From IMG/VR virus record IMGVR_UViG_3300008954_003475, positions 1-64,000 of that record: a DNA stretch of 64,000 nucleotides; one strand, given 5' to 3'. A program made the translations under genes and the position numbers. The notes under the pieces are model-generated. The model was not told the origin of the DNA, made no database searches, and saw only the letters and a program-made list of their open reading frames with translations. Within the stretch, counting starts at the first letter, position 1. Each line of letters opens with the position of its first letter. Below, piece after piece: positions 21,459 to 42,057 of this stretch.

Positions 21459-22397
21459 TTACTTATCGCTACAGAATAAACTTTGACTGACTTCGCCAAG
21501 AAGCCCTGGCATGTCCATCCCTGCACAATCTATCTTTGTTCTTACAAAGTTATAATGATTAGAGAAGCCTTCAAAACTGCCATCTTCGCAGCCGCTATGC
21601 ACAGTGGTGCATAATGTGCCATCAGAATTTTGCGGATATTCTAATGGAATTCCAAGCCCTAAATGAACAGCTTTCCACAAAGCTTTTAGGGCTTCAATTT
21701 GGACAGGATAAAACCACATAAAAGGTTTTTGTGTTTTTCCATGCACCTGTCCATTCTCTTGCAATGGTCTTTCACCAAACCCATTTTCAACGTACCAGTC
21801 CTGGTACTTTGGATAATAAGCATTGCTTATCTCTATGCCAATACTTTTTTTATTTCCATGGTATTTGCTGCAATGCCACGCCCCATGTTGCGTATCTAAT
21901 AGTTGATATATTGTTCCATCATTGTCTAAACAAAAATGGACTGATATTCCCCTTCTATTCAATATATTTGCACATGTTTCTGCAGACAAACATACATCCC
22001 AATGATTAACAAACATAGAAGGCTCTCTATCTGGCTTTCCGGAGTTATCATAATACTTTCCAGGGGTTATAGCCAAACCATCCGGCTCGTCCCATAAAAC
22101 CACCTGGGGCCAATCAATTGGCAAAAACTTACCATTATGGACAATAAAATTACTTTCATTATTTAATGTAGATCTTTTCTTTGGTTTATAATTTGATATC
22201 TCGACTTGCCTTTCGGTCCATATCCTCCTATAGGTCATTGGACCGACAAGCCCATCTGCCGTTACCTTGTGGGCTCTTTGCCACTTTTTAACTTTGTTTA
22301 CCAAATCTTCATCAAAATGTTCAGCGCCAAACCAACTAGGGCTCCACCCCAACTTTAATGAGCTAGATTCATTATAGAAGTCTTTGTCCACAGCCAC
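21459..22397 (-). CDS. N-acetylmuramoyl-L-alanine amidase (Amidase_2) with N-terminal peptidoglycan-binding domain (endolysin-like)
   Basis: PG-binding VKKWQRAHKVTADGLVGPMT; amidase motifs VNHWD, VHFCLDNDGTIYQ, AWH, SIGIEI, NHYNF...KIDC; SD AGGAGG before GTG. Confidence 0.85.
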   Translation of the reverse strand: MAVDKDFYNESSSLKLGWSPSWFGAEHFDEDLVNKVKKWQRAHKVTADGLVGPMTYRRIWTERQVEISNYKPKKRSTLNNESNFIVHNGKFLPIDWPQVVLWDEPDGLAITPGKYYDNSGKPDREPSMFVNHWDVCLSAETCANILNRRGISVHFCLDNDGTIYQLLDTQHGAWHCSKYHGNKKSIGIEISNAYYPKYQDWYVENGFGERPLQENGQVHGKTQKPFMWFYPVQIEALKALWKAVHLGLGIPLEYPQNSDGTLCTTVHSGCEDGSFEGFSNHYNFVRTKIDCAGMDMPGLLGEVSQSLFCSDK

Positions 22398-24871
22398 TAC
22401 TTCCTCCTTCTCCTATCTATTATAGAAGCCCTACCACTTTTTGACCCCTTTTGAAGTCTATTAAAGCCAGACTTTTTCTTTCTGATCTTTCTATTAACTT
22501 CTTCAGAAACGGCATTAACCTTATCCTCTCCCAAGTCTAAAGTCATAGCAACATCTCTATTCTTTTCTTTTTGAGAAGCTATTACCGCTTGTTGCTGACT
22601 TTCCTTCTTTAAATTATCAATCCTATCCCTAGGAAGCCCAAGGCCGGCGAACCAACTATATATCTTAATTGAATCCGAATCAGAATCTACATTGTAAACG
22701 CCCTGATAAATAGGAGCTCCGTTTGTTTGCTCTGAAATCATATGAAAACAATAATTTATGTTTATAGCAGGCAGCTTCTCCAGCACTTCTTTGGATCCGG
22801 CAACTATAACTCCGCCAGCTCTTGTTTGCGTTAAGTCAAAACCAGAAGCAAGCATGTTGGAGTTTAGGCTGTCAATCACAGCCTCTGCTAGTGCCGTTTC
22901 TTCCATATAATCTTCAACCTCCATAACCCCATATATAGAACAATCTCCACAAGAAATAATCTTACCAAAGTCGCTTGGGTCTAAAGCTGTAAACCTGGAG
23001 GGCTTAGCCGTAAGGGTGTTGAAAATATGAAGAGGCTCTACAATTGCATTATTTGCAGCCTCCCAAAACTTAGATTGACTAAGGTTTGCATAAATCTGCT
23101 CAATTCTTGCATTATCAACAACAATTAAATTTGAAACAATATTATCTGCGGTAAGCCTTGCCAGCCTAGAGAGAGTCTCTATAGAATTCTTCTTAGATTG
23201 AGCATCCTCTGTAGCTTTCGGCAAAACATATATAACCCCGACCGGAGTGCCCGTTTCAAATAACATTGGAATCAATGTATCAACAGAGCTTGATCCAGTA
23301 CCTCCGCCACCAGAGACGGCCAAATATACCATATGATTTCCTTCAATTACTCGATCAAACAAGGGCTGCATCAAATCAACACTTTCTGCAAAAATTTCAC
23401 GACCTAAGTCCAAGTCCTTACCAGTGCCTCCAAGGCTTCCTTCTAACAAAAGCTTTTGGCTGCCTGGAACATCAATAAATTCAAGATCTTGAGCCGAAGT
23501 GTTAACCACAGCTACATCATATCCTTTTTGGTGAAATACCTCTGCCAGCCTAGACCCTGCTTGTCCAACGCCTATAATGGCCAGCTCTATACTGACACCT
23601 CTTGTGTTTACAACCACAGGCATATCTTCCTCCTTCTTCTTTTGCATTTTTTCACGCAACCTTTCAAGAACATCTTCTTCCTGTCCATCATCTTTGGCCT
23701 CAAGAAGGGGTTCTGTTAAATCCTCCAAAACTTGGTCCGCTTCACCCGCTCCAAAAGCAGCCATCAGCGCCTCATTGTCTTGGTCAATATTTTTTTGAGA
23801 TTTTTCTTTTCGTTTAATCTCAATTTCTTTTACTTCATTTTTACTCATTATAAAATCCTCATAATATCTATTAAGTTGCTCTAATATCTTTTTTCTATTT
23901 GTAGTCGCAAACGGAACATGTGTTTCATTTTTATTATACGAAATTACTTCACAAAGGTATTCGGAATGTTTATTCATAGGGTCTGCATCAACTGTGATTA
24001 TGTCACAGTTCATAGCTTTTGCCTCATAAAAGCTTAACCCAAGCCCCTCCCTGGTAGAGGGGGCGATAACACAGTGTGATTTATCATATAATTTTACTAT
24101 ATCCTCTCTCTTCAAAACATCATTTATTAGTATTATATTCTTACACTTTTTTGCTATATTAGACTCGTCCTCAGTTAATCTCCCGCTAACCAACAATGTG
24201 GCATCTGATTTGGACATTCTGGAAAAATCTGAAAACGCTTCTAACGTTTGAATTGTATTTTTCTGATTAAAACCTGAATTTACAGGCCCAGGATGATAAA
24301 ATGATAATTTTTCTAGATCACCCTTATTTGCCTTAGGGACAAATAAAGCTCTGTCTACATAATCCCAAGATACTTGTTTTTTATTTTTATATTTTCTAAA
24401 TATATTATAAGAAGTTTCCGTAAGACACCAAACTTGATCAAAAATACTATATGAATTACTTTGAACAAACCTTTTATTTATCCACTCAGGCATTGGTACG
24501 TCAATAATCTTTATTCCAGTTTTTGCCTTAATATTCGAAACCCACTGCCCCTTCATCATAAAAGTTTCAAAAGAAATAATTATATCAATATCATTATCCC
24601 TCACAAGCCTTAAAAGCTGCTTCTCTACAGTTTTTTCCTTTGATAGAACATGAAAAGAAACATCAGATAATAAACTTTCATCATATGGTTCAGGATAATG
24701 ACGCCTAAATGTGCCGCCAAGGGCCTCTTTCTTATATTTTGCTTTTGAAACATAAGAAACTTCATTATTCTCACTAAGAATATCCCCAAGAGACTTTGCC
24801 AAATACCAGAGTCCAGATTCAGAAAGATATGTTTTTATCAAAATCTTTTTATTCTTTATTTTATTTATCAT
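22397..24871 (-). CDS. Fusion protein: N-terminal GT-B (GT4-like) glycosyltransferase + C-terminal tubulin/FtsZ-family GTPase
   Basis: aa 1-340 PSTREGLGLSFYEA (E-x7-E); from ~aa 430 IIGVGQAGSRLA, VNTSAQDL, GGTGKD, SGGGGTGSS (tubulin signature), VVDN, T7-like LDPSDF; basic C-terminal tail. Single uninterrupted frame. Confidence 0.88.
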   Translation of the reverse strand: MINKIKNKKILIKTYLSESGLWYLAKSLGDILSENNEVSYVSKAKYKKEALGGTFRRHYPEPYDESLLSDVSFHVLSKEKTVEKQLLRLVRDNDIDIIISFETFMMKGQWVSNIKAKTGIKIIDVPMPEWINKRFVQSNSYSIFDQVWCLTETSYNIFRKYKNKKQVSWDYVDRALFVPKANKGDLEKLSFYHPGPVNSGFNQKNTIQTLEAFSDFSRMSKSDATLLVSGRLTEDESNIAKKCKNIILINDVLKREDIVKLYDKSHCVIAPSTREGLGLSFYEAKAMNCDIITVDADPMNKHSEYLCEVISYNKNETHVPFATTNRKKILEQLNRYYEDFIMSKNEVKEIEIKRKEKSQKNIDQDNEALMAAFGAGEADQVLEDLTEPLLEAKDDGQEEDVLERLREKMQKKKEEDMPVVVNTRGVSIELAIIGVGQAGSRLAEVFHQKGYDVAVVNTSAQDLEFIDVPGSQKLLLEGSLGGTGKDLDLGREIFAESVDLMQPLFDRVIEGNHMVYLAVSGGGGTGSSSVDTLIPMLFETGTPVGVIYVLPKATEDAQSKKNSIETLSRLARLTADNIVSNLIVVDNARIEQIYANLSQSKFWEAANNAIVEPLHIFNTLTAKPSRFTALDPSDFGKIISCGDCSIYGVMEVEDYMEETALAEAVIDSLNSNMLASGFDLTQTRAGGVIVAGSKEVLEKLPAININYCFHMISEQTNGAPIYQGVYNVDSDSDSIKIYSWFAGLGLPRDRIDNLKKESQQQAVIASQKEKNRDVAMTLDLGEDKVNAVSEEVNRKIRKKKSGFNRLQKGSKSGRASIIDRRRRK

Positions 24872-25577
24872 ATACTAGTTTGCCACCAAGCCTTTCTTTT
24901 GAGGCCTTTTTTATATCTTCTATATTTTGTTCGAGCTCCTTCTTTCGATCCTTCTGCTGAGTCAAAGAGCCTCCTCTTGGAATTACAGAATAATAATACA
25001 AAATTTGATGAATATATTCTATAGGATATTGCTCAGAAATCCTCAGCCACATGTCGTAGTCTTCTGCAATCCAAAGATCTTCATTAAAAAGACCAACGTC
25101 ATTTAAAACAGCTCTCTTAATTGTGGTAGATCCTGATGCTACAAAATTTTGAGTCATAAGAGCAGAATGGTCTATCCTTATAGGTCTTTTATAAAAAGGC
25201 TTTTTAAGACGAACTCTATTTAATAAAATTTGATAATTTCCACAAGTCATGCCTATATCTGGCCTTTCTTTAAACGCATCTATAGATAATTTTAACTTGT
25301 GCCTATTCATTATATCATCTGCATCCAAAAGACTGACAAGATCTCCGCTTGTTGCTCTAATGCCAACATTTCTTGACGCTCCAGGCCCAATGTTCTTTTC
25401 ATTTCTTATATATTTAACAGTAGGAAATCTCCTCAATAACTTTTTAACATCCTCTGTTGAATTATCATCAACAACTGTAACTGTATACTTTTTATATTCC
25501 TGAGAAAAGCAGCTTCTAATTGCTTGCGTAAGAAATTTTCCAGGATTATAGGCTGGAATGATAATGTCAACCAACAT
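24861..25577 (-). CDS. GT2 family glycosyltransferase
   Basis: IIIPAYN, VDDNST, GPGASRNVG, LDADD (DxD), EDYDMW. Confidence 0.9.
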   Translation of the reverse strand: MLVDIIIPAYNPGKFLTQAIRSCFSQEYKKYTVTVVDDNSTEDVKKLLRRFPTVKYIRNEKNIGPGASRNVGIRATSGDLVSLLDADDIMNRHKLKLSIDAFKERPDIGMTCGNYQILLNRVRLKKPFYKRPIRIDHSALMTQNFVASGSTTIKRAVLNDVGLFNEDLWIAEDYDMWLRISEQYPIEYIHQILYYYSVIPRGGSLTQQKDRKKELEQNIEDIKKASKERLGGKLVYDK

Positions 25578-26523
25578 CTTTCAAAATCCTTAAATACTGC
25601 TCTACAATCAACCTAGGATTAAAACTTTCAAGCATATACTGTCTAGCTCCTAAAGATAAATCTTTTCTTAATTCAGAATTTTCCATTATTTCCGATATTG
25701 CTTCACAATATGAGTCTACGTCTCTACTTATAATAATCCCTGTTCTATAATTCTCTCCATGCAGATAAACTTGTGGATGAGTAACAGAGGGGACTCCGGC
25801 AGACCACTGTTCCATAAGGGCGGTTCCTTTGGTCTCGCTCAAAGAAGTGCAAATATAAAGATAGGCCTTCTTCGCCTCTTCAATATGAGTTTTGTAGTTA
25901 TATGGTCTACCATCTCCCAAAAATAAGAACTCATATTGTTTTAAATTATTTTTTATTTTTTTAGCAAACTCAATATCTTTAACCATATGCCGCGAATTTC
26001 CTTTCCACAAAATGTACTTGCCATACCTATCTGGCGGAGACCACAAATCAACATCTGGGCCAACCATAAAGCTCTCAAGCTTGTCTATCGGCAGTGCGTG
26101 CTTATTGGATATAAGATATCTTAACCTATCATTAACAGTTAATATCTTTTGATATTCTATTTTCTTCAAAAAAGCCTTCTCTTGCTTATACTCTACTGTA
26201 TCAAGCAAGTTTGGACCTAAAATAACTGGCTTTTTATAAGTATTTGCAAGCTGAATTATTGTTAAAAACGTATTTACCAAGCCACTCCAGCAGTGGAATG
26301 CCTTGCACTCTCTTATATCATTTAATAAATCTGTTGCATGTCTTGTTGTTTTTAGTTGAACATTTGGAATGTCCGAAAAAGACTCCAAATGTGTATAAAT
26401 AGACAATTGTACTTTTGGCAAATATTTAGAAACAAATTTTGCAAAATTAAGCAAGTCCATACCAGGACCATTTACAATGCCATTAGATATACCTATATTG
26501 AATGCTAGTATAACAACTTTCAT
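25567..26523 (-). CDS. GT-B (GT4-like) glycosyltransferase
   Basis: TSLSETKGTALMEQWSAGVPSV (E-x7-E) and typical C-terminal helix. Confidence 0.8.
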   Translation of the reverse strand: MKVVILAFNIGISNGIVNGPGMDLLNFAKFVSKYLPKVQLSIYTHLESFSDIPNVQLKTTRHATDLLNDIRECKAFHCWSGLVNTFLTIIQLANTYKKPVILGPNLLDTVEYKQEKAFLKKIEYQKILTVNDRLRYLISNKHALPIDKLESFMVGPDVDLWSPPDRYGKYILWKGNSRHMVKDIEFAKKIKNNLKQYEFLFLGDGRPYNYKTHIEEAKKAYLYICTSLSETKGTALMEQWSAGVPSVTHPQVYLHGENYRTGIIISRDVDSYCEAISEIMENSELRKDLSLGARQYMLESFNPRLIVEQYLRILKDVG

Positions 26524-26578
26524 AAGCTTCCTTGTGACATTTTACTGCCAAAATTGCTTAAAATTTTATATTTTTTGA

Positions 26579-28063
26579 TTATACTTGTTCGTGCGGTGAT
26601 ACGGCTTCTTCTTCGATATTCTCTGCCGGTTCAGCCGCCGTCTTGGACCCCTTTATGTTTGTATCCCAATGGTAATACATCCTGCTCAAAAACTTCTTAT
26701 ATCTCTCTTGTTTTAGTCTTTCTAAAGTTTTTCCATAAATAGGTGTTTTTATAATCTTATCTACCGGCCTTACTTCTAATTGAGCCTTATAGTCGCCAGC
26801 CAAAAATGACATACTCAACATTTCATCAAAACTTATATTCGAAATATCTTCTGGACTCATGTCCTTTGTAGCTTCTTCTATTTGAAAAATAATCTGCTCA
26901 TAATGCGCCTTGCCCTCTTCTCTCGTTAGCAAGTAAAACCCTCTATCGTACGAATACATTTCGTTATAACTTGGTATTAATTTTACTTCACTTTCCGGAT
27001 CAAGCTCCATATTTATAAAAGAACTTTTAGCATACTGTGGAATATCATATATCTGCTGATAAGTTGGTGCAGGACCAGTGCCTGTTAATTCTGAAAATAA
27101 ATTATTATAATTAACCACAAGCAGTCTCTCAACATCTACATTTTCTCTTTTCGCTATAGACTTTAACGTATCTCCCTCTCTAGACAGAGATTGAGAATCT
27201 GCTCTGTTTGGAATCATAAGCTCAAGACCTTGGGGCAAAACTTTTGTTTTAATAGATCTATAAAGTGATTCAATAGCAGAGGTGTCTCCAGACAAAAGGC
27301 CGCTTAATGCATTCATAAATCTCTCCGGAGAAACACCCACGGATGGCTCTTGAATTATTGTATCCATATTTTGAGCAAGAAAACTTCGCGAATCAACCTG
27401 AAGCTTTCTGGCAATATCTTCAATAGATTCTCCGTTTGGATTAAGCACCTCATATCTTTCACCAACTCTGGCCGGCATTTTCATAACATCTTTGACGTGA
27501 ACCTCTTCATGTCTTAAGGTTTCTATAAAATAAGCTTTTACTGCCCTTGTAAATAATCCAAACTCCTTATTAAAATCTCCCATTATCTCAGGAAGCTTTG
27601 ACATATTATTGCCTATCTCTCTCATTGCCGCTTCTTGCAAACTAATATTTGGATTAAAACCAAGCACCACCACCTTTTCAGACTTATCTTTGTCCCAACC
27701 AGTTTGGCCTGGAGGAAGCCCGGGATTGTCTGAAAATAATATCATATATATTCCGGTTATATCCTTTCCGCTAACGTCCTGTCTTTGCCTAACTGTTTTT
27801 GCAGCCAAAGCATTTGCCACATCCTGCCCTACCGAAACCCTTCCAGTTATAATCCCAAGAACATCCAAGGGTGCAATTCCATGAGCCAACATTTTTGCCC
27901 CAATTTCTCCCAAAAGCTCTTCGACTATATCAACAATCTCTGCCCGATTAACCGGCAGAGGTCTGGACATGGCTAACTTTAGATTTTCAGCAACAAGTAT
28001 GGACTCAACCAGAAAGCCTTTGTTGGACAACCACTTTTGTAATTTTTCTATTTTGTTTATCAT
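26579..28063 (-). CDS. HExxH metallopeptidase-like protein with two LysM-like repeats
   Basis: ETLRHEEVH; NGESIEDIARKLQVDSRSFLAQN and EGDTLKSIAKRENVDVERLLVVN. Confidence 0.6.
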   Translation of the reverse strand: MINKIEKLQKWLSNKGFLVESILVAENLKLAMSRPLPVNRAEIVDIVEELLGEIGAKMLAHGIAPLDVLGIITGRVSVGQDVANALAAKTVRQRQDVSGKDITGIYMILFSDNPGLPPGQTGWDKDKSEKVVVLGFNPNISLQEAAMREIGNNMSKLPEIMGDFNKEFGLFTRAVKAYFIETLRHEEVHVKDVMKMPARVGERYEVLNPNGESIEDIARKLQVDSRSFLAQNMDTIIQEPSVGVSPERFMNALSGLLSGDTSAIESLYRSIKTKVLPQGLELMIPNRADSQSLSREGDTLKSIAKRENVDVERLLVVNYNNLFSELTGTGPAPTYQQIYDIPQYAKSSFINMELDPESEVKLIPSYNEMYSYDRGFYLLTREEGKAHYEQIIFQIEEATKDMSPEDISNISFDEMLSMSFLAGDYKAQLEVRPVDKIIKTPIYGKTLERLKQERYKKFLSRMYYHWDTNIKGSKTAAEPAENIEEEAVSPHEQV

Positions 28064-28101
28064 GACTATAATTACTCATATTGGACAAAATTAATAATAG
28101 A

Positions 28102-34694: not shown

Positions 34695-35644
34695 TTTACC
34701 TCTATAAAACTTTTTTTATTAAACCCTTTTACCATAATTTTGCCATTCAAACCAAATGGCATCCTCATAGTTCTGTAATCAAAAAATAAATTTTTTGATT
34801 TTTTATGATATTTTCTAAAAGAATTTGCATACTCGTTCCTCGCAACGCTTCCCCCTCCAAGGTCGGAGCTTCTGGTGAGTGAATTTTTTACATATAAGGC
34901 CCTATAGGTTGCATGGCAAAAAACCCCAATATTATTTGAACCATAATATTTTGCCATACGGTGTCTAAACTCTGTATCTGCACCGCATCTAACCATATGA
35001 TAATACCCTATATCATTTAAAGTCTTTTTTCTATCAAAAAACATAGATGCCTCACAAATCTTTGGCCCAGAAGCCTTCCTGCCAGATGTTGCATATCGAT
35101 TATGCAAAGACAACACAGCGGAAAGATTTTTTGCTTTATAACAAGATATCAATGCTAAAATATGATCTTTATGAATTATATCATCAGCGTCTAAAAAAGT
35201 AGCATACTTTCCTTTTGCAATATCTAATGCATAATTTCTACATGCATATGGTCCATAATTTTTTTTATTTAAAATAATTCTAACTCTATTATCAATTATT
35301 TGCTTTAATATTTTTTCCACATTATCGCTTGATTTATCGTCAATTACTATAATTTCTATATTTTTATATGACTGCCCCAAAGCAGATCGAACAGCTCTTG
35401 CAAGCAATTTGTTTTTATTATAATTTGTAATAATTATAGTAACCATATCATTTAAAGCATTTGCACCAATATTTGGCACAGAAGTAAATATGGTATATTT
35501 ATTTATAGTTTTTAAAATCTTTTTTTTATTTGCATTACCTTTAATTATTAAAAAACCTTTTTCCATAGAAACAGAAATAGGTTTTTTAATATTTTTATTC
35601 GAAACCCTGTATCCCTTCGGCCTTGTTCTTCTAAATCTGGACAT
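34691..35644 (-). CDS. GT2 family glycosyltransferase
   Basis: IIITNYN, IDDKSSD, GPYACRNYAL, FLDADD, GADTEF. Confidence 0.88.
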   Translation of the reverse strand: MSRFRRTRPKGYRVSNKNIKKPISVSMEKGFLIIKGNANKKKILKTINKYTIFTSVPNIGANALNDMVTIIITNYNKNKLLARAVRSALGQSYKNIEIIVIDDKSSDNVEKILKQIIDNRVRIILNKKNYGPYACRNYALDIAKGKYATFLDADDIIHKDHILALISCYKAKNLSAVLSLHNRYATSGRKASGPKICEASMFFDRKKTLNDIGYYHMVRCGADTEFRHRMAKYYGSNNIGVFCHATYRALYVKNSLTRSSDLGGGSVARNEYANSFRKYHKKSKNLFFDYRTMRMPFGLNGKIMVKGFNKKSFIEVK

Positions 35645-35703
35645 ATTTTAATATTTTTTATTGCTCTTATTCTAAATTATATTTATTAAATAATATAAAG
35701 AAC

Positions 35704-36381
35704 TCATGACTTACTTCTGTCTATAAGATCTTTTTTCAAGCCAAGAGTGCTGCCATCATAAGCTTTTTTGTTAATTTGAGTTTTTTTCTTTAAATATTTT
35801 TTTCTAAGATATTCATTAAATCTTTTTGCAGACTTATCATTAGAAAACTTTCTTAATTTCTGAGTATATTCAAAATACTTTTTAAACGCCACCCCTGGGC
35901 TTGGGGCTGAATCATGATCTCCCAAAACCTTTTTTATTTCTATATTTTTATAACCCAATTTAGCAGCTCGCTTTGCATAATCACGATCTCCTCCCAAAAC
36001 GTCTCTAAATTCTAACTTTTGCAGCGGCTCTACACTCCATAGCTTTAAGGATCCAATTTTGCTTTTTAAAAATAAATCATACAAAAGAGATGAAGCATTT
36101 AATATTTTTATCCTCTGTCTTTTTTTATTATTTGCAAACTTTAATAACTCATCTAAAGCGTTTGGATAAAGATACATATCCTCATCTATTTGAAAGCACC
36201 ACTTGTAACCAGCGGAGGCTAACCTCATCTCGTTTAACCACTCTGATTGAGGCTTCTTGTCTCTAATGACCACAACGCTATCTACACGCCGATCTTTTTC
36301 TGCAATTTTATCAACAAGCTTTTTACACTTCGGAAAAGTTGAAGATCCAATTGTTCCTATACATATAATAACATTATTCAC
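35704..36381 (-). CDS. GT-A (GT2-like) glycosyltransferase
   Basis: FQIDEDMYL (DxD), GGDRDY; embedded in the GT cluster. Confidence 0.55.
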   Translation of the reverse strand: MNNVIICIGTIGSSTFPKCKKLVDKIAEKDRRVDSVVVIRDKKPQSEWLNEMRLASAGYKWCFQIDEDMYLYPNALDELLKFANNKKRQRIKILNASSLLYDLFLKSKIGSLKLWSVEPLQKLEFRDVLGGDRDYAKRAAKLGYKNIEIKKVLGDHDSAPSPGVAFKKYFEYTQKLRKFSNDKSAKRFNEYLRKKYLKKKTQINKKAYDGSTLGLKKDLIDRSKS

Positions 36382-37318
36382 TTCTAAGGCCTTTAGTTAT
36401 AAATTTTTCATATAAAGACTTTGCTCTTGAATTTGCAAAATGATTTTCATTTGCATATTTTAATATTTTATTATAATTTGCGCTTTGTTGACTCATTGCC
36501 CTCGCCTTTGCTACCATCTCCCTCTTTCCTAAAAATACTTTTCCTAAAAATGGATTCTCTCTAACCAATTTTGCCTCAGGGACTGTAGCCTCTACCAAAA
36601 CTGGGATGCCGCATCCTATATATTCAAAAAACTTAGATGAACTTTCTATTTGAATTTTTTTGCTGTCCAAACTATAAACAGAGGGTGCAAATCCAATTTT
36701 ATAACCCTTTCTGTTTAAAAGCCTATATAAGCCATTGTGATCAACTGGCTCTACAATATTTGCTAAATTAAATCTTCTTTGTAAAAATTTAAGATTCTCT
36801 CTAGACTTCTTATCTTTATTATGAAATCTTAAAATATCGCCTTTATACCAATATTTTATTGGCAAAATATCTACGTTTATATTCTTAGATAAAATAATAA
36901 GCTTTTTCTCTATTTGTCCCGTAACTCTGCCTAAAAAAATCAATCCCTTTCTGTCTTTATTCAATTCTGCTTCAGATAATTTAATACCCTGGCAATAATT
37001 CAGCATTCTAAATTGATTTTTATGTTTTATTTTATCTGACAAAGTTGTTGAGCAATAATCTGTAGCCCATGATACAACAGGTTTTGCTTCAGAAAAATTA
37101 AGAATACGATTAGCATTAATCTTTCTTTTTGGGACAAACCTATCACATATTGCAAAATCATATTTTATATTATAATTATTTACTTCATATTTAAAATCAA
37201 TAAAATTATTTAACTCATCTAAAATTTTAAATATCTTACAAGGAGAGTTGTGAATACAGCTAAATCTATCTTTTTCTTCTTTATATTTTGTAAAAATACC
37301 TATACTGTAAACCCTCAT
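36374..37318 (-). CDS. Divergent GT-B glycosyltransferase-like protein
   Basis: FLGRV, SSKFFEYIGCGIPVL (GT4-type C-terminal motif). Confidence 0.55.
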   Translation of the reverse strand: MRVYSIGIFTKYKEEKDRFSCIHNSPCKIFKILDELNNFIDFKYEVNNYNIKYDFAICDRFVPKRKINANRILNFSEAKPVVSWATDYCSTTLSDKIKHKNQFRMLNYCQGIKLSEAELNKDRKGLIFLGRVTGQIEKKLIILSKNINVDILPIKYWYKGDILRFHNKDKKSRENLKFLQRRFNLANIVEPVDHNGLYRLLNRKGYKIGFAPSVYSLDSKKIQIESSSKFFEYIGCGIPVLVEATVPEAKLVRENPFLGKVFLGKREMVAKARAMSQQSANYNKILKYANENHFANSRAKSLYEKFITKGLRSE

Positions 37319-38247
37319 CGCTTAACGCCCTCGAACACTCTTTCCCACCTTTCTAAGTAATCTTTTATATGAAAATATTTTTTTGCCTGTTCTCTTCCGG
37401 CGAGCCCCATCTCTTCTTGTAATGATTTAGATTCTAATATTTTATTACAATATTTCAACATATCTGTTTTATTGTTTGCAAAAAAACAATTTATACCATG
37501 TTTTAAATATTTATCTATTCCATAATTATTGGTCGTAACCACAGGAGTCCCACACATAAGGGCCTCGGCCCTTGTTCTGGGCATAGCGCTTTTTGTTGTT
37601 GTATTGAGAAAAGCACTATATTTATTATAATGCCGAACCAAGCCCTCTAGGCCAAAATTACCAATAGATTCTCTTAAACTTTTATTGCCATGACCGATAA
37701 GATCGCACTTCTCCAATTGATTGGAGACCCATCTCCACTCATCAAACCCTAATAATGCGCCTCTTCTTTTAAAAACATTACCTGCGCTAAGAATCCTGCC
37801 ATTTCTTTTAAGGTTTAATAAACCAAACTCATTTGGATCAAAGCCATGAGGTATATAAAAATGTTTTTTACCGGACAATTCTCTTCTAAAGTTATCCATA
37901 GAAACTTTAGAATTCCAAACGCAACACTTCACCCATCTTGGAACATTGAATGGAGTATGTGTCTGCATAACCGCTATTCCCGGCAACCTTCTAGATCTTC
38001 CATGCCTAAAGATGTCATATATCTTTGGATTCACGCCCACCCTGACTATGATTACATCAAACCTTTTTCTTCTAACATCTTTTTCCCTAATATAATTTAC
38101 ATTCTTATTCGCTGGCCTATTGAGATCCTCAGGAGTTGGCGCTGTTCCGTTTAAATTTGTACAATAAAAATCATGACCTGTTTTGAAAAACTCATACTGA
38201 TGTCCGCCGTGTACCAGCCAATCCATAATTTTTAATTTTTTTAACAT
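37315..38247 (-). CDS. GT-B (GT4-like) glycosyltransferase
   Basis: HGGHQYE, IPHGFD, AMPRTRAEALMCGTPVVTT. Confidence 0.82.
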   Translation of the reverse strand: MLKKLKIMDWLVHGGHQYEFFKTGHDFYCTNLNGTAPTPEDLNRPANKNVNYIREKDVRRKRFDVIIVRVGVNPKIYDIFRHGRSRRLPGIAVMQTHTPFNVPRWVKCCVWNSKVSMDNFRRELSGKKHFYIPHGFDPNEFGLLNLKRNGRILSAGNVFKRRGALLGFDEWRWVSNQLEKCDLIGHGNKSLRESIGNFGLEGLVRHYNKYSAFLNTTTKSAMPRTRAEALMCGTPVVTTNNYGIDKYLKHGINCFFANNKTDMLKYCNKILESKSLQEEMGLAGREQAKKYFHIKDYLERWERVFEGVKR

Positions 38248-39368
38248 TATAAAAACCTTTTAAATCTATTTTTTGATAAAATTTGTTCAATCCTTAAGGC
38301 ACAAGAATTTACATCCAAAGAGGCCGCTAGCTTCTTTGCGTTTTCCAACTTATATAAATCACTATTTTTATTCTCAAAAACCGTCCTCATCAACGATCTA
38401 AGGTGTGTAACGCTGGGGTTCGCCCACATTTGATATGATCCATACCAAGGATTCCAATCCATCCTTTTTACCGGCCCGAGCTTATGTTTTATGATACTAG
38501 CATTATCATCATTTAGAAGCTCTGTTATGCCGCCAAATTTTGTAGTTATTACCTTGCTGTCACACAGCATAGCATCATGTATCGGCATCCCCCAGCCCTC
38601 TCCGTGATGCGGCAAAACAAAGGCATCACACAGCTTGTGAAGACCCATCAGATGCTCTCTGCTAATATGCTTCATCATTAAAAATATTTTTGGCAAATCT
38701 TTTTTATTTGCCATTCTTTTTGCTTTTAATATATCAAACTTAATCTTTGAAAGGCCATGCCTTTCTATATTTATTGGATTTACTTTTAATATCAATATTA
38801 CATTATCATTTTCACCAAACTCTTCATAATACGCCCTTAAAAGCTCTCTATATCCCTTTCTTTCATTCCATTGAAATACAGAATAAAATTTAAAAGTTTC
38901 TTCGGATAAAACTAACTCCCTTGTTACAGGAGAAGGTATTTGAACATTATGATAATCAATATTTATATCACAAGGTGTATGCAAAATCTCAACAGGACCT
39001 TTGAATCCAGCTTTAAGACAAGCTTTTCTAGTAAGCTCACACGGTGCCCATATCTCATCAAGATTATTTCTAATATCTTTCGCCCACGATTTCGGAAGAA
39101 CATTTGCTTCCCAATAAAAATATCCAATTTTATAATTTTTAGATATATGTTTACCAAATGGTGGCGTATGTATATAGAAATCAACACTTGTTTCACCGGC
39201 ATGATTATTTAAGCTATTTTTCATACCTTTATTTTTTCCACTTATCTCAAACCTGGTTAAAACATTTGATTTTGAAAACGCTAAACACATATTTGTTGTT
39301 GCATTTCCATACCCACTTGTCCAATAAGGCTTTCCAAAAAATCTAACTGCTGGCAAATTATTTTTCAC
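38247..39368 (-). CDS. GT-B (GT4-like) glycosyltransferase
   Basis: SGYGNA, GYFYWE, FQWNERKGY, PHHGEGWGMPIHDAM. Confidence 0.85.
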   Translation of the reverse strand: MKNNLPAVRFFGKPYWTSGYGNATTNMCLAFSKSNVLTRFEISGKNKGMKNSLNNHAGETSVDFYIHTPPFGKHISKNYKIGYFYWEANVLPKSWAKDIRNNLDEIWAPCELTRKACLKAGFKGPVEILHTPCDINIDYHNVQIPSPVTRELVLSEETFKFYSVFQWNERKGYRELLRAYYEEFGENDNVILILKVNPINIERHGLSKIKFDILKAKRMANKKDLPKIFLMMKHISREHLMGLHKLCDAFVLPHHGEGWGMPIHDAMLCDSKVITTKFGGITELLNDDNASIIKHKLGPVKRMDWNPWYGSYQMWANPSVTHLRSLMRTVFENKNSDLYKLENAKKLAASLDVNSCALRIEQILSKNRFKRFL

Positions 39369-40891
39369 TATATATACTCTCCAACCATCAATTCTGCATC
39401 GCTATCTCTTTCTTCAAAATTAGGTAAATTATTAATTATTTTTTCAAAAAATTTATTAGATATAGTTTCAATATTATGATTATCTATAACATATTCTCTT
39501 AAATTTTGACAATAATTTGACATATTAACCTGGGCCCCGACAAGCTCTCTATCGCCCTCTAAAGAGCCGCTTAATATGTTGAAATTATCTAAACTAGCAA
39601 AATTATTTGCTATTTGTCCTACGCCCGTTGAATAAATCGGCAAACAGCAAGACATTGCCTCCAGAATAGATATTGGAGTTCCTTCCATTTTTGACGTTAA
39701 CAAAAAAGCATCAAAGATATTGTAAAAATCACTAACATTATTCTTTTGACCTAAAAACAAAACATTATCAATATTATGCTCCTTTGCAAACGCTTTTAGT
39801 TTGCCCTCTTGGGGCCCAGAACCAACAATTAGCAGGCGAATATCTTCCAGACCCTTAACGAGTCTTAATGCATATTCAATGTTCTTTTCCGGAGAAAGCC
39901 TGGCGACCATCCCAAATGCCGTTTCTCCTCTAATTCCCAACTCTTTTCTTAACTCTCTGTTTTCTCTTCTTATAAAAACACTGGTATCAATTCCAACTGG
40001 CATTAAGATCTTATTTTTATCTAAAACACCAACAATATCCTTCGTCAATTCTTCGCTTACTTTGAAAATATTATCAACACCTGATCTGCTTCTTGTGTTT
40101 GCAACAGCATCACCCCAAATAAAATCACTATGGTATATCTCAACAACTTTTGCTGTTATTTTCTTGCTTTCTTTTAACTTCGAAATAACATCATATATCT
40201 TTTTGCTATTATAAAAAATAACTGTATCATAATTATGAGATATAAGAGTTGCTGATAAACGATCTAATGTTCTAATGAGCTTATGCTTTATATTTGGATT
40301 TGATAATTCAAATTCTAATTTATTTTTTGATAAATACAAAAAATCTATATGAAACATATCTTTAGTTTTAGAGAAAATATTTTTAATATAGACTTCTCCG
40401 CCGCCATATATGCCATAGGGTATAATAACTGCAATTTTCTTATTAAAAGATATATTTTGCATATAAAGCTCCATCTGCCTAACTTCGTCCAACCGTTTCT
40501 CTTTTGGTTTTTTTATTATAGGCTTAATAATTCTATCATCACTTACGACAACTCTTCCCAATTCTATTCTTCCAAATGAATTTTTTGATCTTGATATTTC
40601 AATTATACAATTATCAATATTTTCTTTACATTCAAAAGAATATTCGGACCAAGAACTTTTTGTAAACTTTATTTCTTTTTGAAAAAATATCTCTCCACTT
40701 TTCTTTTTAATATATAACTTTAATATCCCATTTCCTGAAATCTTTTTACCAATTATTTTTATTTTTGCATTTTTAAAACTTAAAATATCTGTAGACAAAC
40801 TTGACTTTGCAGACATTACAATGTTTTTATCTACAAAGCTAACTCCAGAAGACTTCCATTTAATATTATTATATGAATCTAATATTTTCAT
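39368..40891 (-). CDS. GT4 glycosyltransferase with extra N-terminal beta-rich domain
   Basis: GGGEVY, VARLSPEKN, IVGSGP, TSKMEGTPISILEAM; ~150-aa N-terminal extension. Confidence 0.85.
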   Translation of the reverse strand: MKILDSYNNIKWKSSGVSFVDKNIVMSAKSSLSTDILSFKNAKIKIIGKKISGNGILKLYIKKKSGEIFFQKEIKFTKSSWSEYSFECKENIDNCIIEISRSKNSFGRIELGRVVVSDDRIIKPIIKKPKEKRLDEVRQMELYMQNISFNKKIAVIIPYGIYGGGEVYIKNIFSKTKDMFHIDFLYLSKNKLEFELSNPNIKHKLIRTLDRLSATLISHNYDTVIFYNSKKIYDVISKLKESKKITAKVVEIYHSDFIWGDAVANTRSRSGVDNIFKVSEELTKDIVGVLDKNKILMPVGIDTSVFIRRENRELRKELGIRGETAFGMVARLSPEKNIEYALRLVKGLEDIRLLIVGSGPQEGKLKAFAKEHNIDNVLFLGQKNNVSDFYNIFDAFLLTSKMEGTPISILEAMSCCLPIYSTGVGQIANNFASLDNFNILSGSLEGDRELVGAQVNMSNYCQNLREYVIDNHNIETISNKFFEKIINNLPNFEERDSDAELMVGEYI

Positions 40892-42057
40892 AAAATATCC
40901 AAGATCTGTTTGGCCGCCCTCTCCCAGGTAAACAGCTTCACTGTTTTGTTAGACTCCTTTTTTAAACTCTTCTTTATATCTTTATAGTTCTCATATGCTT
41001 TTGTCATGGTTTCAGACAATGCATCTATATCTGGAATATAAGTTTTGGCCCCAGGAGATGGTCTCCAATATTGATATTTGTCTGTGGCATCAATTTCTTT
41101 TACATCAACTAATAATGAATTTTTATCATTTAAAAAATCTAACTGACCAGTACACCTTGGCGCTATAACGATCATGCCTGCGGCCAAACCCTCCAGCAAT
41201 GGTAGTCCAAACCCTTCAGAAGAAGAGGCGCTAACAAGACATTCGCAAGAATTATATAACGGAACCATGCTTTCGTATCGATGCTGAACAACCTCCACCT
41301 GAGGCAGCCTTCTGCCTTTATGCTTTTTCTGTATTTTAAGAATTTCTTTAACAACATCACATTCAAACCTATATTTTGGCTCATTCAACTTTACTTTCAG
41401 CAAAAGACATACATCATCATCGTCTGTAAATGCACTATAATATGCATCAACAAGCAAATCTATATTCTTTCTATAATGAGGTATAGAGACGTTTAAAAAC
41501 TTAAATTTTCTCTTTGTCTTAAGATTATCAACTTTTGCTTTATTCTTAAAATCCTGAGGATTAATACCATGAGGTACAACTATACATTTTTCTTCTGGCC
41601 ATCCGGCATTTACAAAAATCTCTTTTGAAAAATTACTGGAAGGTAAAGCATAATCTACATGTTGAATTTCTTTTGACCAAACTTTTGGCAAAATACTTGT
41701 TTCATAATTGTAAATTGCTAATTTTAATTTAGAATTTTTATTAAATCTATATTTAAAATTTCTAGGCAATGTATAAGTGAGATCAATATCCGCATTTATA
41801 CCCTCCCTGCAAAGCTCCATCCAATCTTTTGGAAACAAATTATATTTATTTGTACTATTTAAAAACAAATCATGGCCCATTAAGTGAAATTCTCTTAATA
41901 AGCTGCGCATAGTGACCGCCCAACTATGGGAAGTGCCAAGCATCGATTCTGCTCTAATTCTTAATGTGTCCATGGTATGAGAATTATACCAAATAATGCT
42001 TTGTTTTTTTATAAAACTATGGCAAATGGAAGTAGCATGGGAACGGTCCTTCGACAA
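40888..42057 (-). CDS. GT-B (GT4-like) glycosyltransferase (likely true start ATG 41973)
   Basis: YNYETS, VVPHG, PHYRKN, ASSSEGFGLPLLEGL; the MDTLRIR start follows TGGTATAAT and removes the 41-nt overlap with the upstream gene. Confidence 0.87.
   Translation of the reverse strand: MSKDRSHATSICHSFIKKQSIIWYNSHTMDTLRIRAESMLGTSHSWAVTMRSLLREFHLMGHDLFLNSTNKYNLFPKDWMELCREGINADIDLTYTLPRNFKYRFNKNSKLKLAIYNYETSILPKVWSKEIQHVDYALPSSNFSKEIFVNAGWPEEKCIVVPHGINPQDFKNKAKVDNLKTKRKFKFLNVSIPHYRKNIDLLVDAYYSAFTDDDDVCLLLKVKLNEPKYRFECDVVKEILKIQKKHKGRRLPQVEVVQHRYESMVPLYNSCECLVSASSSEGFGLPLLEGLAAGMIVIAPRCTGQLDFLNDKNSLLVDVKEIDATDKYQYWRPSPGAKTYIPDIDALSETMTKAYENYKDIKKSLKKESNKTVKLFTWERAAKQILDIL

What the first reader, a model, noticed from the sequence alone, without database searches (positions are those of the whole stretch)
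22397..42057. ~20-kb phage glycan-synthesis island wedged directly behind the baseplate genes
Seen: about 10 GT domains (GT2 and GT4-like, two weak), Gmd, an SDR epimerase, a sugar dehydrogenase, a cupin, three sulfotransferase-like proteins and a PP-loop enzyme, tightly packed and co-oriented right after the structural module. I found no Wzx/Wzy/ABC exporter or undecaprenyl-priming GT. Known: virion glycosylation occurs in giant viruses and some mycobacteriophages. Inference: an unusually complete pathway for cytoplasmic glycosylation of virion proteins (glycan shield or adhesion), not an exported capsule.
Basis: partly seen in the sequence, partly recalled or inferred. Interest (0 to 1): 0.72.

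Follow-up and report, generated by a model that had tools for sequence, protein, structure and literature searches.

The report
Jumbo-phage glycan island ending in glycosyltransferase–tubulin fusion
A marine jumbo phage carries a real 20-kb block of soluble sugar-building enzymes between its tail-fibre genes and its lysis gene, probably for coating virion proteins with a variable, negatively charged glycan, and its last gene unexpectedly joins a glycosyltransferase to a tubulin-like filament protein.

Summary
Window 22397-42057 (minus strand) encodes 19 tightly packed genes. They include 9 Pfam-supported GT domains plus one GT2-like protein, Gmd, and a WbpP-like 4-epimerase. There is also a short NDP-sugar dehydrogenase, a PMI-like cupin, two sulfotransferases plus one sulfotransferase-like protein, and a PP-loop/DUF6395 protein.

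The window is the first 64 kb of a 222-kb marine jumbo-phage contig. Related contigs keep the order baseplate J, two giant proteins, glycan island, endolysin, UvsW. The island has conserved ends and a variable middle, and measures 17-41 kb.

No polytopic membrane protein or Bac_transf priming enzyme was found, even in a 94%-complete relative. No thymidylate-synthase-like hydroxymethylase or C5 DNA methylase was found either. This favours cytoplasmic glycosylation of virion proteins over capsule export or DNA glycosylation, but the acceptor is inferred, not shown. The pathway is not complete, because precursors and PAPS must come from the host.

The fusion occurs in more than 70 metagenomic protein clusters and has split or re-formed at least 8 times. 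I found no description of it in the literature.

The parts
59979..60410 (-). gp25-like baseplate / sheath-initiator protein (context)
   Evidence: Pfam Sheath_initiator is below its cut-off; PHROG 2669 baseplate protein, E 3e-13.
56644..59970 (-). Baseplate J / gp6-like wedge protein, 1108 aa (context)
   Evidence: Pfam Baseplate_J, E 1e-21. PHROG 6, E 8e-44. It is 51-52% identical and syntenic in relatives G001, G002 and G005.
46676..56635 (-). Giant 3319-aa protein with a ConA-like lectin (Laminin_G_3) domain. It is a putative baseplate-distal or fibre protein and a candidate glycan acceptor.
   Evidence: Pfam Laminin_G_3 at residues 3085-3163. Position is conserved after baseplate J in G001, G002 and G005 at 36-44% identity. 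No PDB or PHROG match. The role is inferred from position.
42017..46618 (-). Acidic 1533-aa protein, a putative fibre and candidate glycan acceptor. Its 3' end overlaps the first GT gene.
   Evidence: No family hit. Conserved directly upstream of the GT4 block in close relatives and seen upstream of it in four distant relatives, among them L126, L129 and L135.
40888..42057 (-). GT4 glycosyltransferase, 389 aa. It is the first and most deeply conserved island gene.
   Evidence: Pfam Glycos_transf_1, E 3e-11. Homologues follow the fibre gene in close relatives and lie within 6 kb upstream of TubZ in 31 of 53 distant loci.
39368..40891 (-). GT4 glycosyltransferase, 507 aa
   Evidence: Pfam Glycos_transf_1, E 1.5e-25. 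Conserved in G001, G002 and G005.
38247..39368 (-). GT4 glycosyltransferase, 373 aa
   Evidence: Pfam Glycos_transf_1, E 1e-10. Conserved in relatives.
37315..38247 (-). GT4 glycosyltransferase, 310 aa
   Evidence: Pfam Glyco_trans_1_2 and Glycos_transf_1, E about 5e-10. Conserved in relatives.
36374..37318 (-). Weak GT-B-like protein, 314 aa
   Evidence: Pfam Glyco_trans_1_2, E 0.007, below the cut-off. Homologue in G001 at 43% identity.
35704..36381 (-). GT2-like (GT-A) protein, 225 aa
   Evidence: No Pfam hit. DED motif. ESM Atlas features score 0.98 to GT2 clusters. Part of a 460-aa protein in G001.
34691..35644 (-). GT2 glycosyltransferase, 317 aa
   Evidence: Pfam Glycos_transf_2, E 3e-30.
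33519..34694 (-). PP-loop ATPase-like protein with C-terminal DUF6395, 391 aa. Possibly a sugar amidotransferase or adenylating enzyme. It belongs to the variable part of the island.
   Evidence: Pfam DUF6395, E 1e-12. SGGVDS motif with weak GMP-synthase and QueC-like hits. A relative with an 89%-identical fusion gene carries DegT and GFO_IDH genes at this position instead.
32714..33502 (-). Short NDP-sugar 6-dehydrogenase, 262 aa. It has GxGxxG and the catalytic GGACFPKD motif but no C-terminal nucleotide-binding domain.
   Evidence: Pfam UDPG_MGDP_dh_N plus central domain. TIGR03026 positions 71-289 of 413. The short form (261-290 aa) is conserved in relatives.
31779..32717 (-). SDR nucleotide-sugar 4-epimerase, WbpP/WbgU-like, 312 aa
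   Evidence: Pfam Epimerase, E 9e-59. PDB 6dnt, 1sb8 (WbpP) and 3ru7 (WbgU), E 1e-61 to 1e-53. Paired with the dehydrogenase across relatives.
31153..31782 (-). Sulfotransferase (Sulfotransfer_2), 209 aa
   Evidence: Pfam, E 1e-13.
30118..31143 (-). GDP-mannose 4,6-dehydratase (Gmd), 341 aa
   Evidence: Pfam GDP_Man_Dehyd, E 5e-104. 62-75% identical in all marine relatives examined.
29349..30155 (-). Sulfotransferase (Sulfotransfer_3), 268 aa
   Evidence: Pfam, E 7e-13.
28484..29368 (-). Sulfotransferase-like protein, 294 aa
   Evidence: No Pfam or NCBIfam hit. RSGQHG loop. Atlas features score 0.96-0.97, and structure TM 0.52-0.59 to sulfotransferase clusters. This is a lead, not proof.
28102..28476 (-). 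Small cupin resembling the catalytic domain of type II mannose-6-phosphate isomerase. It is the conserved partner of Gmd.
   Evidence: Pfam Cupin_2 and MannoseP_isomer. TIGR01479 C-terminus. Conserved in relatives.
26579..28063 (-). 494-aa protein with an HExxH motif and LysM-like segments. Probably not a glycan enzyme.
   Evidence: Weak Pfam LysM hit. HEEVH motif. Present in close relatives and absent from G001, G002 and G005.
25567..26523 (-). GT4 glycosyltransferase, 318 aa (conserved distal block)
   Evidence: Pfam Glycos_transf_1, E 9e-7. Conserved in relatives at 40-49% identity.
24861..25577 (-). GT2 glycosyltransferase, 238 aa (conserved distal block)
   Evidence: Pfam Glycos_transf_2, E 1e-27. 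Conserved in relatives.
23849..24871 (-). GT4 (GT-B) domain of the 824-aa fusion protein, residues 1-341
   Evidence: Pfam Glycos_transf_1, E 1e-11. AF2 pLDDT about 90. VIA Z 23-24 to BshA, PimA and a chlorovirus GT. EX7E (E275, E283), H193 and K204 are invariant in 38 homologues.
22397..23848 (-). TubZ-like tubulin/FtsZ-family part of the fusion, residues 342-824. It comprises a conserved internal Met342 with a GAGGA motif upstream, an approximately 80-residue disordered linker, the GTPase and activation domains, and a basic C-terminal tail.
   Evidence: - Family: Pfam Tubulin, E 6e-12; PDB RepX/TubZ 4ei7, E 2e-15.
- Fold: Foldseek TubZ, E 1e-19; VIA Z 35.6.
- Motifs: G-box GGGGTGS and T7 residues D631 and D634 are invariant.
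- Junction: analysis.
21459..22397 (-). Amidase_2 endolysin with a PG-binding domain (context). Its start overlaps the stop of the fusion gene.
   Evidence: Pfam Amidase_2, E 2.5e-15. Syntenic in relatives.

Best explanation
**What it is.** The interval is a clade-conserved glycan-assembly module of an uncultured marine jumbo myophage. The contig is 222 kb and about 66% complete, and the nearest isolate is the very distant Bacillus phage G.

**How it most likely works.**
- The module takes host GDP-mannose and UDP-HexNAc.
- It remodels them with Gmd plus the cupin, and with the short dehydrogenase plus the WbpP-like 4-epimerase.
- About ten soluble GT4 and GT2 enzymes string the sugars together.
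- Sulfotransferases using host PAPS, and a PP-loop enzyme, decorate the product.
- The expected product is an anionic glycan containing 6-deoxyhexose and HexNAc(A).

**Why the acceptor is probably a virion protein.** The genes are fused into one tightly packed unit with the fibre genes upstream and the endolysin downstream. No exporter, polymerase or priming enzyme exists in the lineage. The most likely acceptor is therefore a phage structural protein glycosylated in the cytoplasm late in infection, and the two giant proteins encoded directly upstream are the prime candidates.

**Variability.** The conserved ends and swappable middle of the island diversify the glycan between strains.

**The last gene.** It joins an apparently active GT4 to an apparently polymerisation-competent TubZ-like tubulin through a disordered linker. 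A retained internal ribosome-binding site and Met342 may also yield free TubZ.

**Shown versus inferred.**
- Shown: gene content, soluble nature, synteny and variability, absence of export and priming genes, intact motifs in both halves of the fusion.
- Inferred: late expression, the virion-protein acceptor, glycan composition, and any functional coupling between the filament and glycosylation.
For: - **Gene content:**
- **Phage identity and context:**
- **Synteny with conserved ends and a variable middle:**
- **Deep conservation:** a 4-6 kb ancestral mini-island lies between the fibre gene and TubZ in relatives among the 77 TubZ loci examined (GT4-389-like gene within 6 kb upstream in 31 of the 53 with enough flank).
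- **GT clustering:** all Glycos_transf_1 hits in the own contig and in G001 lie in the island.
- **No export or priming genes:** no polytopic membrane protein in the own contig or the 94%-complete relative, and no Bac_transf.
- **No route to glycosylatable DNA bases:** no thymidylate-synthase-like enzyme and no C5 methylase.
- **Tight packing:** overlapping gene ends with the fibre gene and the endolysin.
- **The fusion:**
- **Precedents:** mycobacteriophage virion glycosylation, cited in PMC12619734. A chlorovirus GT is among the best structural matches.
Against: - No direct evidence identifies the acceptor.
- The scan flagged S/T-rich segments only inside two fibre-like proteins, and none at a C-terminal tail.
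- The major capsid protein was not identified.
- No RNA run holds the sequence, so late expression rests on gene packing alone.
- Soluble GT4 and GT2 enzymes, WbpO/WbpP-like enzymes, and pyruvyl- and methyltransferases in relatives are all typical of O-antigen or capsule pathways, which work on lipid-linked acceptors that a host could prime and export.
- The own contig is only about 66% complete.
- The hydropathy scan is crude.
- In distant relatives the gene next to TubZ is an SDR, not a GT. In phage G the homologous FtsZ-like gene has no GT neighbours. TubZ may therefore belong to the replication module.
Confidence: 0.5

Rival explanations
1. **Host-surface remodelling.** The phage GTs and sugar-modifying enzymes act at the inner face of the host membrane on host-primed, undecaprenyl-linked intermediates. 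The host's own flippase, polymerase or ABC system exports the altered O-antigen or capsule. The altered surface could block superinfection, or change grazer or phage recognition.
For: - The enzyme set resembles O-antigen pathways: a WbpO/WbpP-like pair, WbpB/WbpE-like GFO and DegT genes in a close relative, and pyruvyl- and methyltransferases in another.
- The layout of conserved flanks with a hypervariable centre resembles O-antigen and capsule loci.
- The published reading of multi-GT clusters in large cyanophages is surface polysaccharide diversification (PMC7824862 and PMC12801897).
Against: - No priming transferase, flippase, polymerase or ABC transporter occurs in the own contig, in a 94%-complete relative, or in two further relatives.
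- The island is welded between the fibre genes and the endolysin in one co-oriented block.
- That position next to the fibre gene has been kept across very deep divergence. This fits a structural or late role better than an early host-takeover role.
Confidence: 0.25
2. **DNA hypermodification.** The glycosyltransferases decorate modified bases in the phage genome to evade restriction, as in T4-like and other phages with glycosylated hydroxymethyl-pyrimidines.
For: - The island abuts the replication module of TubZ, UvsW and DnaB.
- In distant relatives an Fpg/Nei-like DNA glycosylase sits among the GT genes.
- The genome encodes a dCMP deaminase.
- Virus GTs that hypermodify DNA are known, cited in PMC12619734.
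Against: - No thymidylate-synthase-like hydroxymethylase and no C5 DNA methyltransferase was found in the own contig or the 94%-complete relative.
- No Tet_JBP hit, although the control for that search was silent.
- Ten GTs, Gmd, uronic-acid enzymes and three sulfotransferase-like proteins far exceed any known DNA-glycan system.
Confidence: 0.05
3. **The fusion is an accident of adjacency.** The last GT gene of the late glycan module and the first gene of the replication or segregation module (TubZ) overlap and are translationally coupled. One-base changes in the disordered junction therefore repeatedly fuse and split them. The fusion is tolerated because free TubZ is still made from the internal start. 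Under this reading TubZ has nothing to do with glycans.
For: - The fused or unfused state changes at least 8-10 times on the TubZ tree.
- The junction keeps GAGGA plus ATG, identical to the start of separate TubZ genes, and Met342 is present in 36 of 38 fusions.
- The linker is disordered.
- In distant relatives TubZ follows an SDR gene, not a GT.
- Phage G's homologue has no GT neighbours.
- The tubulin half is far more conserved than the GT half.
Against: - The fused form predominates, with 73 of the 114 sequences analysed (drawn from 90%-identity clusters). It persists across lineages that have diverged to 51-57% identity, with both catalytic motif sets invariant.
- A bulky N-terminal enzyme on a filament-forming protein would normally be selected against if it were useless.
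- TubZ stays glued to the end of the glycan cluster across the whole super-clade.
Confidence: 0.45

Closest known systems
Virion protein glycosylation in mycobacteriophages (Freeman et al. 2023, as cited in PMC12619734)
   Same: Phage-encoded soluble glycosyltransferases are proposed to act in the cytoplasm on structural proteins. No export machinery is present.
   Different: - Those systems have 1-4 GTs and target C-terminal tails of the capsid and tail-tube proteins.
- Here there are about 10 GTs plus nucleotide-sugar and sulfation enzymes.
- No C-terminal S/T-rich tail was flagged; the two hits are internal segments of fibre-like proteins.
- The proposed targets are giant fibre-like proteins.
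- Glycosylation itself is untested.
Autonomous glycosylation machinery of giant viruses (chlorovirus PBCV-1 capsid glycans, Mimivirus fibril glycans). This comparison rests on my own knowledge.
   Same: - The virus encodes its own Gmd and several cytoplasmic GTs, clustered.
- Heavily glycosylated surface fibres or capsid are the presumed product.
- A chlorovirus GT (PDB 3oy2) is among the best structural matches of the GT4 domain.
   Different: - This is a bacterial virus.
- There is no GDP-fucose synthase.
- Sulfotransferases and a tubulin fusion are present.
- No homology beyond the enzyme families has been shown.
Multi-GT 'polysaccharide modification' clusters of large marine cyanophages (PMC7824862; S-SCSM2R with 13 GTs, PMC12801897)
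   Same: Large marine phages carry many paralogous GTs plus nucleotide-sugar epimerases. Content is polymorphic between relatives, and function is unresolved.
   Different: - Those clusters are sporadic accessory genes and are read as host-surface modifiers.
- This island is a syntenic core feature placed between the fibre genes and the endolysin.
- It is conserved from a 4-6 kb ancestral form.
- It ends in a TubZ gene or fusion.
TubZ / RepX / PhuZ tubulin-family filaments of plasmids and phages
   Same: - Fold match: VIA Z 35.6 to B. cereus TubZ.
- G-box and T7 catalytic residues are present.
- The TubZ-like C-terminal domain and a basic tail are present.
   Different: - No TubR or centromere partner gene is adjacent.
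- No Pfam-detectable RNA polymerase subunits were seen, and three sigma-like genes suggest use of host polymerase.
- It is N-terminally fused to a glycosyltransferase, or translationally coupled to one.
FtsZ-guided glycan synthesis: treadmilling FtsZ directing septal peptidoglycan synthases, and the chloroplast PDR1 glycosyltransferase ring (found through; details rest on my own knowledge)
   Same: A tubulin-family filament is spatially coupled to a glycosyltransferase activity.
   Different: In those systems the coupling is indirect, through adaptor proteins, and serves division. Here the link is covalent, in a virus, and has an unknown product.

Membership tests
Tubulin/FtsZ superfamily, TubZ-like branch (C-terminal half of the 824-aa protein) | Tubulin/FtsZ GTPase plus activation-domain fold | tested here: met
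   Pfam Tubulin covers positions 2-189 of 190, E 6e-12. phmmer to RepX/TubZ 4ei7, E 2e-15. Foldseek to TubZ, E 1e-19. VIA Z 35.6 over residues 422-768.
Tubulin/FtsZ superfamily, TubZ-like branch | G-box signature (GGGTGS/T) and T7-loop acidic residues needed for polymerisation-dependent GTP hydrolysis | tested here: met
   S520-GGGG-T-G526 and D631/D634 are invariant in 38 homologues. They align with the FtsZ T7 motif.
Tubulin/FtsZ superfamily, TubZ-like branch | TubZ-type C-terminal helix or domain and a charged tail | tested here: met
   Long C-terminal helices in the AF2 model. PF22453 TubZ-like_C hits in homologues. Conserved basic tail.
Tubulin/FtsZ superfamily, TubZ-like branch | Cognate TubR DNA-binding adaptor and centromere next to tubZ (type III partition system) | tested here: not met
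   The neighbours are a GT domain or gene upstream and an amidase or UvsW downstream. No small DNA-binding gene is adjacent in the window or in relatives. It is therefore not a TubZRC partition operon.
Tubulin/FtsZ superfamily, TubZ-like branch | GTP-dependent filament formation | not testable with these tools
   The homodimer co-fold gave no verdict. Recombinant protein is needed.
GT4 retaining glycosyltransferases (N-terminal half of the fusion and the other Glycos_transf_1 genes) | GT-B two-Rossmann fold with an EX7E motif | tested here: met
   Pfam hits. AF2 pLDDT about 90 for residues 1-344. VIA Z 23-24 to BshA, PimA, WbnH and PglA. E275-x7-E283 is invariant.
Wzx/Wzy- or ABC-dependent surface polysaccharide locus | Flippase, polymerase or ABC-2 permease (polytopic membrane proteins) | tested here: not met
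   Hydropathy scan of all ORFs. The own contig has none with 5 or more TM segments. The only 5-segment ORF in G001 and the 3-segment one in the own contig are the tape-measure-like proteins.
Wzx/Wzy- or ABC-dependent surface polysaccharide locus | Polyprenyl-phosphate priming transferase (Bac_transf or WecA-type) | tested here: not met
   PF02397 is absent from G000, G001, G002 and G005, and the control rang in 9 genomes. No WecA-like polytopic protein.
Mycobacteriophage-type virion glycosylation | Phage-encoded soluble GTs without export genes | tested here: met
Mycobacteriophage-type virion glycosylation | Glycans on capsid or tail proteins, typically on S/T-rich C-terminal tails | tested here: inconclusive
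   Windows with at least 45% S+T in 30 residues occur only inside two fibre-like proteins, not at C-terminal tails. The capsid protein was not identified. Glycans themselves cannot be tested with these tools.
Phage DNA glycosylation systems | A route to a hydroxymethylated base (TS-like hydroxymethylase, or C5-methylase plus TET/JBP) | tested here: not met
   PF00303 and PF00145 are absent from G000 and G001 with working controls. PF12851 is absent, but its control was silent, so that part is inconclusive.
'Moraphages' (PMC12619734) | Membership by marker-gene phylogeny and shared orthogroups (four core GT groups, PolB or Pol I, glutamine synthetase in some) | not tested
   - Shared traits: aquatic jumbo phage, GT genes, GlnA, HSP20, sigma factors and UvsW.
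- Difference: this genome shows a DnaE-type Pol III alpha.
- No moraphage sequences were available for comparison.

The most novel reading that the evidence does not exclude
The GT4-TubZ fusion is a functional unit. A GTP-driven tubulin-like filament inside the infected cell carries glycosyltransferase domains on flexible tethers, diluted by free TubZ made from the internal start. Virion parts, or a growing glycan, would then be modified along a cytoskeletal track. This would be a covalent cytoskeleton-glycosylation coupling not described for any virus or cell.
Probability: 0.25. Interest if true: 0.85.

Novelty: new variant of a known kind. Interest (0 to 1): 0.62.

Why it matters
**The island.** If virions of abundant marine jumbo phages carry strain-variable sulfated or uronic glycans, several things could change: how these phages adsorb, how they avoid non-specific binding or grazers, how they are counted and fractionated, and how they interact with marine polysaccharide gels. 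The locus gives a defined, conserved gene set and candidate acceptor proteins to test in viral-fraction glycoproteomics.

**The fusion.** The GT4-TubZ fusion offers a tractable recombinant system. It can be used to ask whether phage cytoskeletal filaments do more than position DNA, and how readily neighbouring phage genes fuse and split.

**The evolutionary series.** The deep synteny of fibre gene, small glycan cluster and TubZ across jumbo phages from many environments shows a 4-6 kb core expanding to 40 kb.

Tried and rejected
- **DNA similarity:** megablast of the island against 50,697 phage records found no match.
- **Promoter and terminator scan of the island:** promoter-like sites were at chance level, and terminator-like sites lay inside coding regions. 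The scan was uninformative.
- **Homodimer co-fold of the TubZ part:** no verdict, so it is not evidence either way.
- **ESM Atlas search for the 494-aa protein:** scores below 0.9, uninformative.
- **PDB and PHROG searches of the 3319-aa and 1533-aa proteins:** nothing found.
- **Host inference from Gmd in genome collections:** only small MAG contigs labelled Pacearchaeota or Actinomycetota. They look like mis-binned phage fragments, so the host remains unknown.
- **Single-sequence locus searches with distant TubZ homologues P0122 and P0128:** nothing found. The alignment-based search worked.
- **Expression evidence:** no RNA run was shown to hold the sequence.
- **Programmed frameshift between GT and TubZ in unfused genomes:** rejected. 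The TubZ ORFs have an ordinary GAGGA plus ATG start overlapping the GT stop.
- **Phage-nucleus (chimallivirus-type) PhuZ role:** no Pfam-detectable RNA polymerase subunits were seen, and three sigma-like genes are present. Divergent phiKZ-type polymerases would escape Pfam, so this is only disfavoured.
- **Moraphage membership:** could not be established.

Full report
**What the window is.** The 64-kb window is the first part of a 221,878-bp IMG/VR virus record that CheckV rates about 66% complete. 187 of 201 ORFs lie on the minus strand, so transcription runs from high to low coordinates. In that direction the order is as follows.
- A tape-measure-like 2738-aa protein that starts outside the window.
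- A 692-aa protein.
- A gp25-like protein, then Baseplate_J of 1108 aa.
- A 3319-aa protein with a ConA-like lectin domain, then an acidic 1533-aa protein.
- The 19 genes of the finding.
- An Amidase_2 endolysin, UvsW, an IstB-like loader, DnaB, and a PrkA/DUF444/SpoVR trio.

The rest of the contig carries a tail-tube-like gene, a GpA-type terminase, DnaE-type Pol III alpha, RecA, DnaG, two GroEL genes, sigma factors, GlnA and an asparagine-synthase homologue. No isolated phage matches at the DNA level. The nearest isolate by baseplate J and by the tubulin homologue is Bacillus phage G, at 25-29% identity. The phage recurs in several marine and seawater metagenomes.

**Checking the observation.** Pfam confirms six Glycos_transf_1 (GT4) domains, one sub-threshold GT-B protein and two GT2 proteins. 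It also confirms Gmd, an SDR epimerase, a nucleotide-sugar dehydrogenase, a cupin, Sulfotransfer_2, Sulfotransfer_3 and DUF6395 behind a PP-loop motif. Several details refine this picture.
- The 225-aa ORF is GT2-like, and the 294-aa ORF is sulfotransferase-like. Both rest only on language-model and structure look-alikes plus motifs.
- The SDR is closest to the UDP-HexNAc 4-epimerases WbpP and WbgU, not to GDP-fucose synthase.
- The dehydrogenase keeps GxGxxG and the catalytic GGACFPKD motif but lacks the whole C-terminal domain. This short form is conserved in relatives.
- The 494-aa ORF has an HExxH motif and LysM-like segments, and is probably not a sugar enzyme.
- Gaps inside the island never exceed 59 nt. 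The first GT overlaps the 1533-aa gene, and the last gene overlaps the endolysin start.
- All Glycos_transf_1 matches in the 222-kb contig fall in the island.

**Relatives.** The terminal 824-aa protein recovers eight further IMG/VR contigs at 57-69% identity. ORF-by-ORF comparison, after locating baseplate J in three of them, shows a fixed architecture.
- Baseplate J comes first, then a giant protein of about 3200-3500 aa, then one of about 1500-1800 aa.
- A conserved proximal block of four to six GT genes follows.
- A variable middle comes next.
- A conserved distal block contains the short dehydrogenase, the 4-epimerase, Gmd, the cupin, GT4-318, GT2-238 and GT4-TubZ.
- The endolysin and UvsW follow.

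The island spans 17 kb to about 41 kb, the latter in the 316-kb, 94%-complete relative G001. Content also turns over at short distance. A relative whose fusion gene is 89% identical replaces the PP-loop gene with DegT and GFO_IDH genes. Others carry pyruvyl- and methyltransferases. The island is therefore inherited, not a recent host capture, and its centre is a hot spot of turnover.

**Deeper relatives.** An alignment-based scan with the tubulin part found 135 confirmed loci, of which the best 80 were kept, many on contigs of 200-480 kb from varied environments. In the 77 loci where the TubZ gene was recovered:
- UvsW lies within seven genes downstream in 66.
- Among the 53 with enough upstream sequence, an SDR lies within three genes upstream in 44.
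- A homologue of the first island GT lies within 6 kb upstream in 31.
- The distance from that GT to TubZ has a median of 5.7 kb.

Pfam on one such mini-island gives a weak GT4, GT2, an Fpg/Nei-like glycosylase, an unknown protein, GT2 and an SDR, followed by TubZ. The marine clade of the window has thus expanded a small ancestral glycan cluster that always sits between the fibre gene and TubZ.

**What the glycan is made on.**
- *Export and priming.* Hydropathy scans find no polytopic membrane protein in the own contig or in G001, beyond tape-measure-like proteins and small holin-like ORFs. Bac_transf is absent from four genomes, with a working control.
- *DNA modification.* Thymidylate-synthase-like hydroxymethylases and C5 DNA methylases are absent from the own contig and from G001. 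The Tet_JBP search was negative but its control was silent.
- *Precursors.* APS kinase is absent. A sugar nucleotidyltransferase exists only in G001, outside the island. Precursors and PAPS must therefore come from the host.

Together with the welded position between fibre genes and endolysin, this favours cytoplasmic glycosylation of structural proteins. It does not prove it. The same soluble enzymes could work on host lipid-linked intermediates, which is how comparable cyanophage clusters have been read. No C-terminal S/T-rich tail was flagged by the scan, and no expression data exist.

**The fusion.** Residues 1-341 of the 824-aa protein form a confident GT-B domain, with pLDDT about 90 and VIA Z 23-24 to BshA, PimA and a chlorovirus GT. 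EX7E, H193 and K204 are invariant in 38 homologues. Residues about 346-424 are disordered. Residues 425-770 are a TubZ-type tubulin.
- Best PDB sequence match is RepX/TubZ 4ei7, E 2e-15.
- Foldseek gives E 1e-19, and VIA gives Z 35.6.
- The G-box and T7 aspartates are invariant, and the C-terminal tail is conserved and basic.

A database search lists more than 70 full-length fusion clusters, on contigs up to 348 kb. It also lists unfused homologues of about 460-475 aa at 60-77% identity. In unfused genomes a 340-aa GT4 gene directly precedes TubZ and overlaps it.

On a tree of the tubulin part, the fused or unfused state changes at least 8-10 times. The junction explains why. Separate TubZ genes start at an ATG preceded by GAGGA inside the last codons of the GT gene. 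Fused genes keep the same GAGGA and the Met (36 of 38), so a one-base change toggles the state, and free TubZ may still be made from fused genes.

A library-wide search shows the TubZ family is large, with 168 representatives at E<=1e-30. It includes intein-bearing members and one fused to a PilM/FtsA-like domain. The GT fusion, however, is confined to this clade. Literature searches found no description of it.

The fusion may be functional, or it may be a tolerated accident at the border of the late and replication modules. I cannot decide between these and rate them about equally.

**Verdict.** The island is a new variant of known phage and giant-virus glycan clusters. Four things distinguish it: its deep synteny with fibre genes, its sulfation genes, its conserved-ends and variable-centre design, and the GT4-TubZ fusion.

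Noticed in passing
window 10745-11326 (-): A 193-aa protein with a DisA_N/DAC diadenylate-cyclase domain (Pfam E 1e-13). It is a possible phage-encoded c-di-AMP synthase.
   Followed up: no
window 11399-15897 (-): A PrkA / DUF444 (YeaH) / SpoVR trio with very strong Pfam hits. It is conserved at 57-77% identity in the related jumbo-phage contigs whose loci reach that far and always lies downstream of DnaB.
   Followed up: partly
window 32714-33502 (-): The nucleotide-sugar dehydrogenase is a conserved short form (261-290 aa across relatives). It has an intact Rossmann motif and catalytic Cys motif but no C-terminal nucleotide-binding domain. It is unclear how it binds its substrate.
   Followed up: partly
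L088:2292-3131 and the equivalent ~277-280 aa ORFs in many loci of L077-L138: An Fpg/Nei-type DNA glycosylase (H2TH, E 1e-18) sits between glycosyltransferase genes in L088; similarly sized ORFs occupy that position in many distant relatives but were not scanned. Its link to the glycan genes, if any, is unknown.
   Followed up: no
proteins P0145, P0150, P0152, P0187, P0223, P0242, P0254, P0265, P0175; P0239: Nine of the ten long (795-983 aa) TubZ-like homologues checked are interrupted by inteins, eight of them with LAGLIDADG homing-endonuclease domains. One (P0239) is fused to a PilM/FtsA actin-like domain.
   Followed up: partly
L039:11503-13962; L003, L007, L008 UvsW ORFs of 790-845 aa: UvsW helicase genes in several relatives are about 300 aa longer than in the window. 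In L039 the gene carries Hom_end/LAGLIDADG (intein-like) domains.
   Followed up: no
L054 (NZCX01000036.1) and L055 (WLOB01000045.1): Short contigs binned as 'Candidatus Pacearchaeota archaeon' and 'Actinomycetota bacterium' carry Gmd at 79% and 66% identity. The Pacearchaeota contig, and possibly the other, is probably a mis-binned fragment of this phage clade.
   Followed up: partly
window 62583-63959 and beyond (G000 62583-70799, -): The ORF cut by the window end is a 2738-aa protein with three hydrophobic segments, probably the tape measure. The 'moraphage' paper reports not finding a tape measure in its lineage.
   Followed up: no
window 2-3863 (-): A DUF2793 protein and a 1027-aa protein with S/T/G-rich repeats look like a second set of fibre genes at the far end of the window, separate from the baseplate module.
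   Followed up: no
G000 213551-215203 (-); G001 266537-267908; G005 22166-24001: An asparagine-synthase-type amidotransferase lies far from the island in the own contig. Its weak homologues (26-30% identity) lie inside the islands of relatives, next to the dehydrogenase in G005. This hints at uronamide formation.
   Followed up: partly
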